A stretch of 64,000 nt of DNA from Diadema antillarum (lineage: Eukaryota). The DNA lies in NCBI RefSeq assembly GCF_040938485.1, contig NW_027271052.1:744001-808000 (forward strand). The letters are read 5' to 3'. This document shows, in pieces, positions 36,302 to 64,000 of the stretch (its first letter is position 1; each line of letters begins with the position of its first letter). The notes beneath the pieces are model-generated. The model saw nothing but the letters and a program-made list of their open reading frames with translations. It ran no database searches and was not told where the DNA came from. A program made the translations under genes and the position numbers.

Positions 36302-36391
36302 TCATTGGACCTTGTTCGACGTTTCTATGACAACAGATTCCATAGTATCCGACATCCCCCTCTCTCGCGTCTCCAGCCTTGAAGCGTCAAG
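36302..36391 (-). CDS. Amt: Probable Amt terminal exon (LDASRLETRERGMSDTMESVVIETSNKVQ*)
   Basis: Strong pyrimidine tract with ctaac branch-like motif and acceptor gtctacag|CTT; phase 0 matches the upstream exon; TGA at 36304-36302. Confidence 0.6.
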   Translation of the reverse strand, partial: LDASRLETRERGMSDTMESVVIETSNKVQ

Positions 36392-37021
36392 CTGTAGACA
36401 AATGTTAGAAGAGAGAAAGAGTGACAACAATGACAAAGAGAACAAGAGGGAGCCATAGATTGATAGATACAATGAACAGAAATCAACACACGCAATACAA
36501 AAAGAACAGTTAAAAGAAAAAGCAAAGCAAGCAAAACAAATAAAAATGGCTAATAGCATTTCTGATTGATGCCCTCTGCGCAATTAACAAATTGGCCGAT
36601 TGAGAGTCATTTATATTGTATAATGTCGATGCGGCCATAGCACTTTATCACTCTTCTGTCGAAACTCACAGTAGTCGACCAGCAATTTGGTGAGATGGAT
36701 TCGAGATGGGTCTGTCACGTGACCAACCGACAGCCAAGTTGACAGACTAGATGTGAGAAATTAAGTGCTATAATATCCAAATAAATTTTCCCCTATCATT
36801 CACCTGCAGAACGGACTTATCAGCTATCATCTCCCGTCAGACACGGAAAAGGTCAAGAGCGTATATGAATGATTTAGTATTTGGAGCTGGCAAGAGAGGC
36901 TCGGACAATCGATAAATCTGGCGAACATTTTACCCTTTCGCCAGCGTCATGGATAGAAATAAATTGAGAAATTTATGGTCGGGTGGTCAAGATCAATAAA
37001 CTTTATGAAAGTGGAAATAAA

Positions 37022-37587: not shown

Positions 37588-39730
37588 TTGACACATAAAT
37601 GCAACGGGGGCAAACAAACACCTACAACTGGCACTCTTTGCTCCCATCTGGTGGAGGGGGGAATATCTGTTATACATGAAGGAAGGGATATCGGTTGGTA
37701 AGAGAAAAATAATCTGTGTTTGTTGGACAAGATTGAGTTACAATAAGCAAACCATTTTTTAACACTTCTTCACCCTCTTCTACCGTCGCATAAACTGCAT
37801 GGGAACTTAATGTAGGTGTCATGCTTTTTCTGTTTTCCAAAAACATTGTGAAATTATGTCACTGGTATAATTATGGTGCTAAGAAGAAACTTGTCAATGC
37901 ATATTTTCATAACACATACAGGTAGTGATAAGATATTGAAGTATAAAGAAAAACCTTGAAATCGAAACAAATGTTTGATAACCTTTGATTAATGATACAC
38001 ATCCTACTAATGCTAATTTTGATGCTTGTGTACTTTCTATCACTATCTAAAAATGAAATTTGAAAAAAAAAGAGATGATGCAATGAGCGATTGAGTTTTT
38101 CCTGTCTTCTGTTTGACTTACCATTTCAATGCACTTTTCTCTTTATCAATAACAACTAGTGTTTCTCATTCATTAGTTCACCGTTTCAGATAATGTTCTT
38201 GTCCCAATCGCCTTCCACTTTCCAACTGTCGTTAATCATGAATAAACGCGAAACCTAAGTAATTAGATTGGCTTAACGAGCAAAATTTTAACCAAAAAAA
38301 AAAAAAAATCGAAAGAGATTGAGTGAGAGGGGGAAGGAGAAGGGAAGTATTTCTATAGGAAATTTGCGATAGAACATTAGTGAATTGCAACGCAAATGTA
38401 ATCAAACGTCGAGAAACTTAATTAGTCTCCAGTAGTCGTTTTCTTTGTTATTTTCTTTGACATGTACTTCTCGCGGGCCAATTGACCCCGAGATCAACTA
38501 TTATACAATGTAAGTGTCACGTCTATGATGAACTTTTGTTTTCAAGCTTATGAGGGATACAGACCGTTTTCAACATTTCTCAACCCTCAGAATGTCTAGA
38601 AATTTATGACATTTGATGGTCAACAGAATTAAGGAACAAAACAAAACACACACACACACACATACGCTTGTTTGCTGAATTGTTAATTCATATGTTCATG
38701 GCTCTAAATTGTATGGCTGTAAATGCACACATAAGGACATGTTGAACGTGAAAAAAAAACAACCAAAAAAGAAAACAACAACAACAGTAAACCAGTTACT
38801 GATTTCACTCCTTGTACATGTCAGTTTCCAATTTCCCTTCTAAACCTCGCTTGTCAAGAATAGTAGTCTGCTTAAAACATTGCGCTATGCAGCAGTGAGT
38901 GACATTGGCTACTATGCCTAGACCTGTATCAATCACTCCGATCCAAGCAAGTATGCGAATCAAGGTCAAGGACAGAATCATATCGCGATACCTTTTATCT
39001 CATTCAATTAATGCGTATTTCTATCAAGGTGGTATTTCTGTCCACGTCCACCCACCTATTCATTTTTTTTTCCACTTTACCCAATCATCAGCGTTTACAA
39101 CCTTAACTTCCCTCGTATTGTCCATCAGTGCTTTGCGCGTAGCGACATCAATACCAATTAATACGAAACGAAAATTTGTTCATTTAGTGCTTTCAAACCG
39201 AAGACAGGTACTTGATTTCTTCTTCTGTTGTTTGATGTTTGTTTCCAGTTTTTCTTCTTCTTCTTCTTCCTTTTTTTTTTGGGGGGGGGGGTAGATAGTT
39301 GAATGAATCAATATTGCTACTCAGGCTTTCTAGTGTTTCATGCACAATGAATTCGTCCGTGATCGTGACCGGAAGTGGCGTAATTATTAAACGGAAACGC
39401 TGCCGTGTGGACAAAAAATTGTTATTTGGCAGGGAACCTCGCATGTGACAAAAAGAAATTCTTTCAAACTAAGGTCATCAGATCTATAACGATTAAAATT
39501 GCTTGCCTGCTATTCTAGACCCAAACTGTTTTTTCCAAGTGTCCTCGACAATCCATTTTGGATGATCACACCCAGTGAAAGCCAGATTGATCGTGTTGAT
39601 TCACAACATTTTTTTTTTTTGGACTAGATTACTCAGAAGTTTGCTGAACTACTAGTAGTTACTTGTTTTAAAGTTTTCTGGAATAATACTAAGTAGGCCT
39701 ACATCTACTGGTATCGCATTATGCGTAGCT

Positions 39731-40650
39731 TTGAATTGAATTGAATTTGAATTGAATTCATTTATTTAACCACGGTAAAAAGCCTGCTATCAGCTATAAG
39801 CTGTTTTTCAGCAAGGCCGTGAAATGATATCAAAACATAGAAATCATACAATGAAGAGAATGCCCATAAAAAACACAAAATAATCATTACAAACGAACGC
39901 CAGAAAAGAAATGAAAAAAAAGTCACAGAATATACATTGTGTAAGTACAGACCAAAAAACAAAAAACAAAAAAAATGAAAAAATGAAAATGAAACATGTG
40001 ATAAGTTATTGGGAGATAGCAATTACATAAGCATTGTGTACTTTAATAAATTTAATATAATCAGGTAGAATAATTAGCAAATGAGATGTGCGAAATTGCT
40101 CTTGAGAATGCAGTGATTGAAGTTAGGATCTTGTTTCTGTTGGTAATGTATTGAATAATCTCGATGCCGAATATAGAGTGCTATTTTTAAGAATAGTTGA
40201 TTTGGGCTTAGAGAGGTTAAGAACATTTTCATGATTACGTAAATTGTAGTGGCTTACTCTTTTCTCGAGACGTTCACATAAACTTTCTGGTAGAAAATTA
40301 TTCAGCAGTTTGAAGATGAAAATCAATGCTTGCTTTTTCCAACGATCGATTAAACAGTCAACTTTAAGTGTACTATATAATGTTTGGCGGTTAAAACGAT
40401 TATCAACTTGCAACACGATTCTCAGCGCCCTGTTTTGTATTATCTGCAATCGCCTTAAGTGCACTGAATTACCATTCATCCACAGAGTACAACAGTAGTC
40501 AAAGTGACTTTGGATTAAAGTGTGGTACAGCGTAAGAGCTGTTGCTTTGTCAATAAAACCCCTTGCCCTTCTGAGTAAATAAAGATTGCGTATGGCCTTA
40601 ACTCTTACACTTTCAATTTGCTGAGACCAAGTTAGATTACAATCAAATTA
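39731..40650 (-). mobile_element. 5'-truncated CR1/L2-group LINE (ORF2 C-terminus, 3'UTR and (AATTC)n tail)
   Basis: Reads FDCNLTWSQQIESVRVKAIRNLYLLRRARGFIDKATALTLYHTLIQSHFDYCCTLW...LQIIQNRALRI...SRLFNTLP; 3' end GGCCTTGCTGAAAAACAG...AAATAAATGAATTCAATTC. Confidence 0.9.
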
Positions 40651-43005: not shown

Positions 43006-43218
43006 CTGGTCGGTTGTTTAGATTCTCAATGTTGTCGGGCTGCGCGAAGATACCAACAGACAGGATGGCCCATGCGGCGGCCAAGGCGTGTACCCCAATC
43101 ACCCCTACCGGGTCGTCGATCTTCATCTTCTCCAGCAAGTGGGGTGTGAACACCGCTATAACTCCACCAATGGCTCCTATGAGTAACCCTTCCCAGGGAC
43201 GGGCAAGGGCGCAAAGTG
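43006..43218 (-). CDS. Amt: Amt exon (ALCALARPWEGLLIG...KIDDPVGVIGVHALAAAW...NNRP; TM9-TM10)
   Basis: Acceptor cgtcgcag|CA, donor G|gtaagt; second pore His in DDP.GV..VH. Confidence 0.96.
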
Positions 43219-45450: not shown

Positions 45451-45587
45451 CTGTCCCAGCGACAAGCCCGCCAAGAACACCGTTGATAAGATCTGAAATA
45501 TCAAACTGACGTTTTTTTGTCAGCCAGCTTCCGAACAGCCCGACAGATCCACCCCCCACAGAGGACATGATGGTATTCCCCGCAGAC
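45451..45587 (-). CDS. Amt: Amt mutually exclusive exon B (RSAGNTIMSSVGGGSVGLFGSWLTKKRQFDISDLINGVLGGLVAGT)
   Basis: Long pyrimidine tract with acceptor cacatcag|G, donor G|gtgatt; 137 nt, phase 2 to 1; open frame homologous to exon A along its whole length. Confidence 0.88.
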
Positions 45588-45688
45588 CTGATGTGAAATC
45601 AACAATAGAAAAACGTGGAGAAACGGTACGAGGATGCGTCACTATGGAAACATGTAAATTGCGTGCAATGAACGGGTTATCCATGTAC

Positions 45689-45831
45689 CTGTGGCGCCCA
45701 CGAGACCCCCTAGCACGCCATTCATGAGATAGCCCAGTTCGAATTTGCATCCATTCGGTCTCAAGAAGAAGCTGATGGTCATACCGACTATACCGCCCCC
45801 TACGGATGACAACAGCGTAATGATGGCTGAC
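45689..45831 (-). CDS. Amt: Amt mutually exclusive exon A (RSAIITLLSSVGGGIVGMTISFFLRPNGCKFELGYLMNGVLGGLVGAT)
   Basis: Acceptor tgaacag|G, donor G|gtacat; 143 nt, phase 2 to 1; TM7-TM8. Confidence 0.9.
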
Positions 45832-46569
45832 CTGTTCAGATAAGAATGAACGTTACATACAAAAACAGCTTTGCGTCAGTTACTTACTTCCCTAGAATTG
45901 TAACCAGGGCTGGTGGATAGGCAATATTAGACCTGTTTTACACGATCTAGACGTTATCTCAGAAATCTATGATCATTATTCAAATCTATGATCATTATAA
46001 CTAAGAACTCGCTAGACATTAAACACGTATTATCATAGTACTAGGAGACAGAAAAAACATCAATGCGTAACATCAGCGCCCCAATTCTCGAAGTTTTGAT
46101 CGTAAACCCTCAACAAAATTAACGTAACGAGTCATTGTTTTTTTCTCCCTAATGCTTTTATTTTGTATAGTAATAATGCCATTACATTTAACACTTTCCA
46201 GGACGCCCGATATTTCTCCAAGATCCTTTATCGATTCGTCACGTTTAGTGCAGGTTGTTGGTCTCAGAGCAATTTGATTTGTACACAAGAACGATAAAAA
46301 AACAACAACAACAACCTGCAGATTACTTTGCACTAAAATGCACTCAGAACTCTATCTAATTACATCACCTTTGAACAACAGTTTTGTTTCCCTGATGTTC
46401 GAGTACCTGCTGATAGCAATTTTAATAATGAGCTATACCACCGTCATCATGAACATCTCACTATTTCGCAGCTAAATCCCTTTCCCCATTACACTCTCCC
46501 TCTCTTGCCCCCCCCCCCTCTTCTCTGCTCTACCCCCCCCCCCGTTTACATTCACCACATGCAACCAAC

Positions 46570-46780
46570 CGTGTTGCCAGTTTCCACTTCCCGCCTGAAA
46601 TGCCGAACGTGCTGCCGCAGTTGAATCCAAGCCACCCCCACCAGAGCATGAACATGCCCAGCAGAGCGTTGGTCGGGTTGCTCATCTCGCAAGGACGTCC
46701 GTTCTCGAAGCGACCACGGCGCGGCTTCAGCATCAAGGTAGCGGTGAGTCCCGTTAGACCCCCGACGAGATGGACGGCGC
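46570..46780 (-). CDS. Amt: Amt exon (GAVHLVGG...LWWGWLGFNCGSTFGISGGKWKLAT; TM5-TM6)
   Basis: Acceptor atcccag|GC, donor CG|gttggt; phase 1 to 2; first pore His. Confidence 0.95.
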
Positions 46781-63638: not shown

Positions 63639-64000
63639 GGGGGGGGGAGCGATCAGTCTTAAGAAATACACGTTTTTACTGATATTCTCTTTTCTTTCAC
63701 CTTCTGTGACCTTTGTCCCTTGCTATTTTACCTTTCATAGTTATATATTTTTGTCAATAGTACTTTGCGTCCTATCTCTATTGCAAAACAAATTTACATT
63801 ATTATTTTTTTTTCCTGGAACCCGTGGTTACAAGCTCTGCTTTTGTGGTTCCGCTTTATATCATAATGTTAGCTATCCTTTTTTTTTTTCCTATTTTTGT
63901 CCTTAGAATATGTATAGACAGATAGACGTCAAGTGAAATATGAAAATAAACGTGCTGAACTGTTCCCTGTGTCTTGAGTGTAAGATCAGTGCAGTTTCAG

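What the first reader, a model, noticed from the sequence alone, without database searches (positions are those of the whole stretch)
45451..45831. Tandem mutually exclusive exons that swap TM7-loop-TM8 of an ammonium transporter
Seen: two exons 101 nt apart, both with canonical splice sites, both phase 2 to 1, both open. They encode homologous but diverged peptides. A: RSAIITLLSSVGGGIVGMTISFFLRPNGCKFELGYLMNGVLGGLVGAT. B: RSAGNTIMSSVGGGSVGLFGSWLTKKRQFDISDLINGVLGGLVAGT. Either one joins the upstream exon (donor 46570) to the downstream exon (acceptor 43218) in frame. Including both adds 137 nt and frameshifts; skipping both also breaks phase. Exon B is absent from the supplied ORF track. Established: in Amt/Mep structures (E. 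coli AmtB) this segment is TM7, the cytoplasmic TM7-8 loop and TM8, which lie at the cytoplasmic pore exit and near the regulatory C-terminal tail. Inference: one gene makes two transporter isoforms (or mixed trimers) with different gating, regulation or targeting. The structural glycines and NGVLGGLV are kept despite heavy nucleotide divergence, which suggests both exons are under selection. I do not know of a described mutually exclusive exon pair in an animal Amt, but I could not search the literature.
Basis: partly seen in the sequence, partly recalled or inferred. Interest (0 to 1): 0.85.

Follow-up and report, generated by a model that had tools for sequence, protein, structure and literature searches.

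The report
Ancient alternative exon pair in echinoderm Amt
A sea-urchin ammonium transporter gene carries two neighbouring, interchangeable copies of the exon for membrane helices 7 and 8; both copies have been kept intact in sea urchins and starfish for hundreds of millions of years, so the gene almost certainly makes two transporter versions, one of which is missing from current gene annotations.

Summary
On the minus strand, exon A (45831-45689, 143 nt) and exon B (45587-45451, 137 nt) lie 101 nt apart. Both have AG/GT boundaries and the same phase, are 49% identical as peptides, and match the same Pfam Ammonium_transp positions (224-266). Either one joins the flanking exons (donor 46570, acceptor 43218) in frame; including both or neither gives a premature stop.

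The window is from a Diadema-like sea urchin. RefSeq models of D. antillarum, D. setosum, S. purpuratus and Lytechinus use only exon A.

The same A(143)/B(137) pair, in the same order and with intact splice sites, is present in 7 genomes: 4 echinoid and 3 asteroid. Starfish RefSeq models use B, not A. The unannotated exon is under strong purifying selection in each class: urchin B has dN/dS 0.10 at dS 0.83, and starfish A has 0.08-0.11 against Asterias. A-type exons form one clade, so the duplication predates the urchin/starfish split. A sea cucumber keeps only A; a crinoid and two hemichordates have one copy.

Between two Diadema species the cassette, including the A-B intron, is 99-100% identical, against about 72% in distal intron.

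No transcript data could be consulted, so use of B in Diadema is inferred. The literature searches here found no described Amt case.

The parts
46570..46780 (-). Upstream constitutive Amt exon. It encodes the pore histidine of TM5 (AVHLVGG), TM6 (LWWGWLGFNCGS) and the first residues of TM7 (KWKLAT). The donor follows 46570; the 5' boundary is approximate.
   Evidence: PF00909 positions 153-221, E = 1.4e-20; tblastn with P0067; splice-site context.
45689..45831 (-). Exon A, 143 nt (47 whole codons plus split codons at both ends). It encodes TM7, an 8-residue cytoplasmic loop RPNGCKFE, and TM8. This is the exon used in the RefSeq models of Diadema, Strongylocentrotus and Lytechinus.
45588..45688 (-). 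The 101-nt intron between exons A and B. It is 100/101 identical between the window and D. setosum, although distal intron is only about 72% identical.
45451..45587 (-). Exon B, 137 nt (45 whole codons plus split codons). It encodes alternative versions of TM7 and TM8 and a loop two residues shorter and more basic (TKKRQFD). It is not used in any echinoid RefSeq model seen here. It is 91% identical in peptide to its S. purpuratus counterpart, with dN/dS 0.10.
   Evidence: (24.9 bits, above the Pfam cutoff).
43006..43218 (-). Downstream constitutive exon (TM9 and TM10, including the second pore histidine in IGVHAL). Its acceptor serves either exon A or exon B.
   Evidence: PF00909 positions 269-329, E = 1.1e-15.

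Best explanation
This is a genuine pair of mutually exclusive exons in an echinoderm Amt-type ammonium transporter gene. A tandem duplication of the exon for TM7, the cytoplasmic TM7-TM8 loop and TM8 occurred before sea urchins and starfish diverged, and after the crinoid lineage split off or with later loss there. Both copies have been kept as coding sequence ever since. An mRNA takes either A or B. Taking both or neither shifts the frame into a premature stop, so only single-exon mRNAs give a full transporter; removal of the others by nonsense-mediated decay is inferred. The two isoforms share the pore-side motifs (GGG in TM7, NGVLGGLV in TM8). The consistent, lineage-wide differences lie at the cytoplasmic end of TM7, in the loop (A: [RKT]-P-x-G-x-K-F-[DE], two residues longer; B: T-[KL]-x-R-x-F-[DN]) and at single positions in TM8. 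The likely result is two transporters with the same conduction core but a different cytoplasmic face, and hence different regulation, partner binding or trafficking. Shown here: the anatomy, the frame logic, deep conservation, purifying selection, and an ultra-conserved cassette. Inferred: actual use of B in Diadema, any tissue or stage regulation, and the functional difference.
For: Anatomy and homology. Frame logic.

Presence in orthologues: the same A(143 nt) then B(137 nt) pair with AG/GT sites is found in the window, D. setosum (L005), S. purpuratus (L002), a Logan contig from a close relative of S. purpuratus (L001), Asterias amurensis (L004), Acanthaster planci (L009) and Patiria miniata (L010).

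Annotated proteins use A in echinoids and holothurians and B in asteroids.

Selection (Nei-Gojobori): B, Diadema vs S. purpuratus, dN/dS 0.10 (dS 0.83, Fisher p = 4e-7); A, same pair, 0.29 (p = 7e-4). Starfish A, which is unannotated there, 0.11 (Asterias vs Acanthaster), 0.08 (Asterias vs Patiria) and 0.18 (Acanthaster vs Patiria; p = 1e-7 and 2e-10 for the two Asterias pairs, the third not tested). Starfish B 0.22 and 0.30 against Asterias and 0.14 (Acanthaster vs Patiria).

Phylogeny: A-type exons of three classes form one clade (support 88/91, present in 92% of bootstrap trees) and share a two-codon insertion.

Cassette conservation, window vs D. setosum: exon A 143/143, A-B intron 100/101, exon B 137/137, next 100 nt 94%, distal intron 72-74%. 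Conserved flanking intron is a usual mark of regulated alternative exons.

Structure: the segment maps to TM7, loop and TM8 in an AF2 model that has the Amt fold (TM-score 0.93 normalised to A. fulgidus Amt-1).
Against: No transcript was seen that joins exon B to its neighbours in any sea urchin, or exon A in any starfish. The protein collections hold no such isoform: clusters, fragment search. RefSeq gives a single isoform per species, even for S. purpuratus, which to my knowledge has deep RNA-seq. So the minor exon must be rare, restricted in time or tissue, or overlooked by the pipeline.

One holothurian has lost B completely, so the pair is dispensable in at least one lineage.

No RNA structure or other cis mechanism enforcing exclusivity was found.
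Confidence: 0.85

Rival explanations
1. Exon B is an unused, decaying duplicate (pseudo-exon) in sea urchins; only exon A is ever spliced.
For: All echinoid RefSeq models use A only. No B-containing protein fragment is in the collections.
Against: B is 42/46 identical in peptide between Diadema and S. purpuratus at dS 0.83 and dN/dS 0.10, which is better conserved than A. Its length, phase and both splice sites are intact in all 7 genomes. It shows 0 changes in 137 nt between two Diadema species whose distal introns differ by more than 25%. A holothurian shows what real loss looks like: no trace left.
Confidence: 0.03
2. Lineage-specific fixation: urchins use only A and starfish only B, and the other copy serves a non-coding role such as a splicing enhancer or a poison exon that triggers decay when co-included.
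For: Annotation uses A in urchins and B in starfish. Co-inclusion of A and B gives a stop inside B, as a poison exon would.
Against: The constraint falls on the amino-acid sequence in the Amt frame: synonymous sites are about half changed while replacement sites are about 8% changed. A poison exon read in the +1 frame, or an RNA element, would not produce that pattern. Amt motifs (GGG, NGVLGGLV) and a Pfam score above threshold are retained.
Confidence: 0.05
3. Both exons are coding and used, but the choice is unregulated noise with no functional difference between the isoforms.
For: No regulatory element or expression pattern was identified here. The pore-side motifs are the same in A and B.
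Against: Two redundant copies would not both be kept for the time since urchins and starfish split. Class-specific differences (P-x-G insertion, T293, I306) are themselves conserved across classes. The A-B intron and the adjacent intron are nearly invariant between Diadema species, which suggests regulation.
Confidence: 0.07

Closest known systems
Mutually exclusive exon pairs made by tandem exon duplication in channel and carrier genes (from my own knowledge: SCN exon 5a/5b, CACNA1C exons 8/8a, SLC25A3 exons 3A/3B; for SCN see PMC12772994, title and abstract seen)
   Same: Adjacent homologous exons of nearly equal length and the same phase, swapping a transmembrane segment plus a loop. The pair is ancient and conserved, and copies are often missing from annotation in non-model species. 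Co-inclusion or skipping breaks the frame.
   Different: The host family is Amt/Mep, for which the literature searches here found no described case. The taxon is echinoderms. The annotated default exon differs between classes (A in urchins, B in starfish).
Other alternative splicing in animal Amt/Rh genes: AgRh50a/b in Anopheles (PMC4216128); RefSeq isoforms of Mytilus and Argiope Amt
   Same: Animal ammonium transporters do produce isoforms. The Mytilus X1/X2 isoforms differ by a 14-residue insertion in the same TM7-TM8 loop, and the Argiope X1/X2 isoforms by 5 residues right after TM8, so this cytoplasmic region is repeatedly varied.
   Different: Those are a cassette or alternative splice-site insertion, or a C-terminal exon change. 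None is a homologous exon swap replacing two helices.
E. coli AmtB, A. fulgidus Amt-1 and fungal Mep2 (solved Amt structures)
   Same: Same fold (Foldseek TM-score normalised to target 0.86-0.93 for AmtB and Amt-1, 0.76-0.83 for Mep2), 11 TM helices, and the twin histidines (H203 and H361 are invariant in the alignment).
   Different: Those are single-isoform microbial proteins regulated by GlnK or by phosphorylation of the C-terminal tail (my knowledge). Here the variation is built into TM7, the loop and TM8 by splicing.

Membership tests
Mutually exclusive spliced exon pair (tandem exon duplication) | Two neighbouring exons of one gene on the same strand, with no other exon between them | tested here: met
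   Exons at 45831-45689 and 45587-45451, 101 nt apart. The gene model from tblastn with P0067 shows no other coding hit between 46570 and 43218.
Mutually exclusive spliced exon pair (tandem exon duplication) | The two exons are homologous and encode the same part of the protein | tested here: met
   49% identity, E = 6e-11. Both align to PF00909 profile positions 224/225-266.
Mutually exclusive spliced exon pair (tandem exon duplication) | Similar length (difference a multiple of 3), identical phase, canonical splice sites | tested here: met
   143 vs 137 nt. Both start with the third base of a split codon and end with the first base of the next. AG and GT are present at all four sites, in the window and in 6 other genomes.
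Mutually exclusive spliced exon pair (tandem exon duplication) | Either exon alone keeps the frame; both or none disrupt it | tested here: met
   In-silico splicing.
Mutually exclusive spliced exon pair (tandem exon duplication) | Both copies maintained by purifying selection in orthologues | tested here: met
   7 genomes carry both copies. dN/dS is 0.08-0.30, with Fisher p from 5e-3 to 2e-10.
Mutually exclusive spliced exon pair (tandem exon duplication) | Transcripts of one species contain exactly one of the two exons, with both kinds observed | not testable with these tools
   No RNA-seq access. The protein collections hold only A-type models for urchins and B-type models for starfish, and no spliced fragments.
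Amt/Mep ammonium transporter (Pfam PF00909) | Significant match to the Ammonium_transp profile | tested here: met
   Four constitutive window exons match PF00909 at E 1.9e-5 to 1.4e-20. Exon B scores 24.9 bits (cutoff 23.2) and exon A 19.7 bits.
Amt/Mep ammonium transporter (Pfam PF00909) | 11-helix Amt fold and twin-histidine pore | tested here: met
   AF2 model of P0067 (identical to the window in exon A; tblastn hits 94-100% in the neighbouring exons and about 80% in two others): 11 long helices and pLDDT mostly above 85 through the membrane domain (10-residue block means). Foldseek TM-score normalised to target 0.86-0.93 to Amt-1 and AmtB. H203 and H361 are invariant in 76 homologues and are encoded in the window exons as AVHLVGG and IGVHAL.
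Amt/Mep ammonium transporter (Pfam PF00909) | Ammonium or methylammonium transport activity | not testable with these tools
   Needs expression in mep-null yeast or oocytes.

The most novel reading that the evidence does not exclude
The pair is a roughly half-billion-year-old isoform switch that retunes the cytoplasmic face of an animal ammonium transporter (loop length and charge, the inner end of TM7). The default exon has flipped between classes (A in urchins and sea cucumbers, B in starfish), with complete loss of B in sea cucumbers. The two isoforms differ in regulation, partner binding or localisation, and may co-assemble into mixed trimers. This would be the first case of helix-swapping alternative splicing in the Amt/Mep/Rh superfamily.
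Probability: 0.35. Interest if true: 0.65.

Novelty: new member of a known kind. Interest (0 to 1): 0.55.

Why it matters
Three reasons.

1. Annotation. One coding exon of this Amt gene is missing from the RefSeq models of every echinoid seen here (exon B) and of every asteroid seen here (exon A). Half of the gene's protein output is therefore invisible in current databases.

2. Transporter biology. Nature offers here a matched pair of Amt proteins that differ only in TM7, the cytoplasmic TM7-TM8 loop and TM8. That makes the role of this poorly studied cytoplasmic region directly testable in oocytes or yeast.

3. Evolution of splicing. The pair is datable (present in urchins and starfish, absent in a crinoid and two hemichordates, lost in a sea cucumber). 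It shows how the annotated default exon can differ between lineages.

It is not a new kind of mechanism.

Tried and rejected
1. Transcript evidence through protein collections. A search of 1.84 billion representatives with exon B found only genomic ORF fragments and distant Amts. A word-index search with P0001 found nothing spliced. Cluster listings hold no A/B isoform pair. These are blanks, not evidence of absence.

2. RNA structure enforcing exclusivity. The cassette folds no better than shuffles (z = 0.46). The best inverted repeat (8-bp core, 45874-45890 with 45495-45511) is not conserved in D. setosum. Rejected as chance.

3. Steric hindrance from a short intron. The A-B intron is 73-101 nt in urchins but 290-618 nt in starfish, so this cannot be the general mechanism. 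I did not locate branch points reliably.

4. Exon peptide alone against the PDB: no Amt hit because the query is too short. Replaced by the full-length homologue.

5. Other annotated Amt isoforms (Lineus, Apostichopus, Amphibalanus, Acanthaster paralogue): they differ at the N-terminus, not in this exon.

6. Apostichopus genomic locus (L003): only 4 kb was returned, so it was not usable. The contig of P0002, a B-like exon of unknown species, had no DNA available.

7. Earlier notes of this scan: none for this place or topic.

Full report
**1. What is in the window**

Read on the minus strand, exon A is 45831-45689 (143 nt) and exon B is 45587-45451 (137 nt).
- Each is preceded by a pyrimidine-rich tract ending in cAG and followed by GT (A: GTACAT; B: GTGATT).
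- The intron between them is 101 nt.
- The two peptides are 49% identical with one two-residue gap (BLASTP E = 6e-11).
- Both align to the same stretch of Pfam Ammonium_transp (PF00909 positions 224/225-266). The exon upstream ends at profile position 221 and the exon downstream starts at 269.
- Exon B scores higher (24.9 bits, above the curated cutoff of 23.2) than exon A (19.7 bits).

**2. The gene**

The first ~134 codons are not in the window. By comparison with D. setosum, where exon A lies 38 kb into the gene, they should lie beyond 64000.

The closest proteins are 'putative ammonium transporter 2' of Diadema antillarum (P0067, XP_071488692) and D. setosum (P0129). The exon A peptide is identical in both; the tblastn hits are 94-100% in the neighbouring exons and about 80% in two others, and these hits run past exon ends. 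The window is therefore from a Diadema-like urchin. It is not the D. setosum assembly, because the introns differ.

**3. Frame logic**

Spliced in silico:
- upstream + A + downstream is open, and so is upstream + B + downstream;
- A + B together run into a stop inside exon B;
- skipping both shifts the frame to a stop about 60 codons on.

**4. Where the segment sits**

An AlphaFold2 model of P0067, built on 76 homologues, has block-mean pLDDT mostly above 85 through the membrane domain and 11 long helices. It superposes on A. fulgidus Amt-1 and E. coli AmtB (TM-score normalised to target 0.86-0.93).

Exon A encodes residues 270-317. That covers TM7 (264-293, all but its first six residues), the loop 294-301 (RPNGCKFE) and TM8 (302-315).

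With an N-glycosylation-rich, presumably extracellular N-terminus and 11 helices, the TM7-TM8 loop is cytoplasmic. This orientation is inferred from topology, as in AmtB, which I cite from memory.

**5. Annotation**

- Every echinoid RefSeq model seen (D. antillarum, D. setosum, S. purpuratus P0147, L. pictus, L. variegatus) uses the A-type exon.
- No cluster contains a B isoform.
- Holothurian models (Apostichopus, Holothuria) are A-type.
- Starfish models (Asterias amurensis and A. rubens, Acanthaster, Patiria) are B-type.

**6. Comparative genomics, the key test**

A search with exon B found a 142-aa ORF (P0001) on a Logan contig (L001). That ORF reads through an A-type exon, a 73-nt intron and a B-type exon.

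Genomic loci of the orthologues were then fetched and searched.

Seven genomes carry A (143 nt) followed by B (137 nt), all with AG/GT and open frames. The A-B intron lengths are:

| Genome | A-B intron (nt) |
|---|---|
| window | 101 |
| D. setosum | 101 |
| S. purpuratus | 349 |
| L001 | 73 |
| Asterias amurensis | 290 |
| Acanthaster planci | 550 |
| Patiria miniata | 618 |

Other taxa:
- Holothuria leucospilota has only the A-type exon. There is no remnant of B in the gap-free 2.7 kb before the next exon.
- The crinoid Antedon has a single 137-nt exon.
- In the hemichordates Ptychodera and Saccoglossus the homologous region is single-copy and split by an extra intron.

**7. Selection**

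Nei-Gojobori estimates:

| Exon and comparison | dN | dS | dN/dS | Fisher p |
|---|---|---|---|---|
| B, Diadema vs S. purpuratus | 0.085 | 0.83 | 0.10 | 4e-7 |
| A, Diadema vs S. purpuratus | 0.25 | 0.87 | 0.29 | 7e-4 |
| A (unannotated), Asterias vs Acanthaster | 0.123 | 1.08 | 0.11 | 1e-7 |
| A (unannotated), Asterias vs Patiria | 0.105 | 1.41 | 0.08 | 2e-10 |
| A (unannotated), Acanthaster vs Patiria | 0.073 | 0.42 | 0.18 | not tested |
| B (annotated), Asterias vs Acanthaster | 0.142 | 0.65 | 0.22 | 4e-4 |
| B (annotated), Asterias vs Patiria | 0.155 | 0.51 | 0.30 | 5e-3 |
| B (annotated), Acanthaster vs Patiria | 0.031 | 0.23 | 0.14 | not tested |

In comparisons against Asterias, and between the two urchins, the exon that annotation omits is the better conserved one. 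It is constrained at the amino-acid level in the Amt reading frame. That excludes a decaying relic, and it excludes a purely RNA-level or poison-exon role.

**8. Age of the duplication**

In a tree of the exon peptides, the A-type exons of echinoids, asteroids and holothurians are one side of a branch (support 88/91; present in 92% of bootstrap trees). They share a two-codon insertion, P-x-G. With only 47 columns the rest of the tree is unresolved.

The duplication therefore predates the split of urchins and sea cucumbers from starfish. By my knowledge that is of the order of 480-500 million years; no dating was done here.

**9. Signs of regulation**

Between the window and D. setosum:

| Segment | Identity |
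|---|---|
| Distal intron | 72-74% |
| 100 nt before exon A | 84% |
| Exon A | 143/143 |
| A-B intron | 100/101 |
| Exon B | 137/137 |
| Next 100 nt | 94% |
| Following 200 nt | 88% |

This island of near-invariance around and between the exons is typical of regulated alternative exons. Both donors lack the consensus G at position +5.

No enforcing RNA structure was found. Intron length cannot be the general mechanism.

**10. What differs between the isoforms**

Across all species, these are shared by A and B: A272, T275, G281-G283, S290, F300, L305, N307, G308, L310, G311, L313, V314 and T317.

Positions that separate every A from every B:
- 273 and 276, in outer TM7;
- 293, 295 and the two inserted residues 296-297, at the cytoplasmic end of TM7 and in the loop;
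- 306, at the start of TM8;
- 316, at the end of TM8.

The stable difference is therefore mainly the cytoplasmic loop and its helix ends. The inference is a shared conduction core with an altered cytoplasmic face (regulation, partners, trafficking). Nothing here tests that.

**11. Novelty**

Full-text searches for mutually exclusive exons together with ammonium transporter returned only unrelated plant transcriptome papers. Searches on sea-urchin mutually exclusive exons returned no Amt case. Insect Amt/Rh papers describe other kinds of splicing.

The kind of feature is well known: a tandem exon duplication giving mutually exclusive exons in a membrane transporter. This member appears undescribed and is unannotated.

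**12. Verdict**

The probability that both exons are used as alternative coding exons is about 0.85. The remaining doubt is the lack of direct transcript evidence. Functional consequences are unknown.

Noticed in passing
L002:29609-29870 (S. purpuratus, intron between exons A and B): The 349-nt A-B intron of S. purpuratus consists of the ~73-nt intron seen in the related contig L001 plus an inserted inverted repeat with 116-nt arms, 97% complementary, and a 30-nt loop. This looks like a MITE-type insertion. As RNA it would fold back and keep the two exon ends close together.
   Followed up: partly
P0188 vs P0189 (Mytilus trossulus Amt isoforms X1/X2); P0103 vs P0181 (Argiope bruennichi X2/X1): The annotated Mytilus isoforms differ by a 14-residue insertion in the same TM7-TM8 loop. 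The Argiope isoforms differ by 5 residues directly after TM8 (LGALVAVT). This cytoplasmic region seems to be a recurrent site of splice variation in animal Amts.
   Followed up: partly
window 37625-37669 and 36305-36394, minus strand: Two D. antillarum RefSeq proteins of this gene (P0128, 603 aa; P0067, 618 aa) end in different last exons, and both exons are present in the window. This may be an alternative C-terminal tail, or an annotation difference between duplicate contigs.
   Followed up: no
L008:14452-17275 (Holothuria leucospilota): The sea cucumber orthologue keeps only the A-type exon. No trace of a B-type exon is found in the gap-free intron that follows, so B was lost cleanly in this lineage.
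   Followed up: yes
L007:8389-8460 and 13415-13492 (Ptychodera flava); L011:3090-3146 and 3439-3516 (Saccoglossus kowalevskii): In both hemichordates the region homologous to exon A/B is split by an extra intron, after the GGG motif of TM7, and is single-copy. The exon structure therefore differs from that of echinoderms.
   Followed up: partly
window 40126-40647, minus strand: A 174-aa open frame lies inside an intron of the Amt gene. From memory, its sequence resembles the C-terminal part of non-LTR retrotransposon ORF2 proteins, but it has no Pfam match.
   Followed up: partly
window >52000 (minus-strand upstream of the gene part seen): The first ~134 codons of the Amt gene (N-terminus, TM1, TM2) give no tblastn hit in the window. 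By comparison with D. setosum they should lie beyond position 64000. The RefSeq accession adjacent to this gene's D. setosum orthologue (XP_072167496) is a second Amt, XP_072167497, on the same contig, which suggests a neighbouring paralogue. It is not in the window.
   Followed up: no
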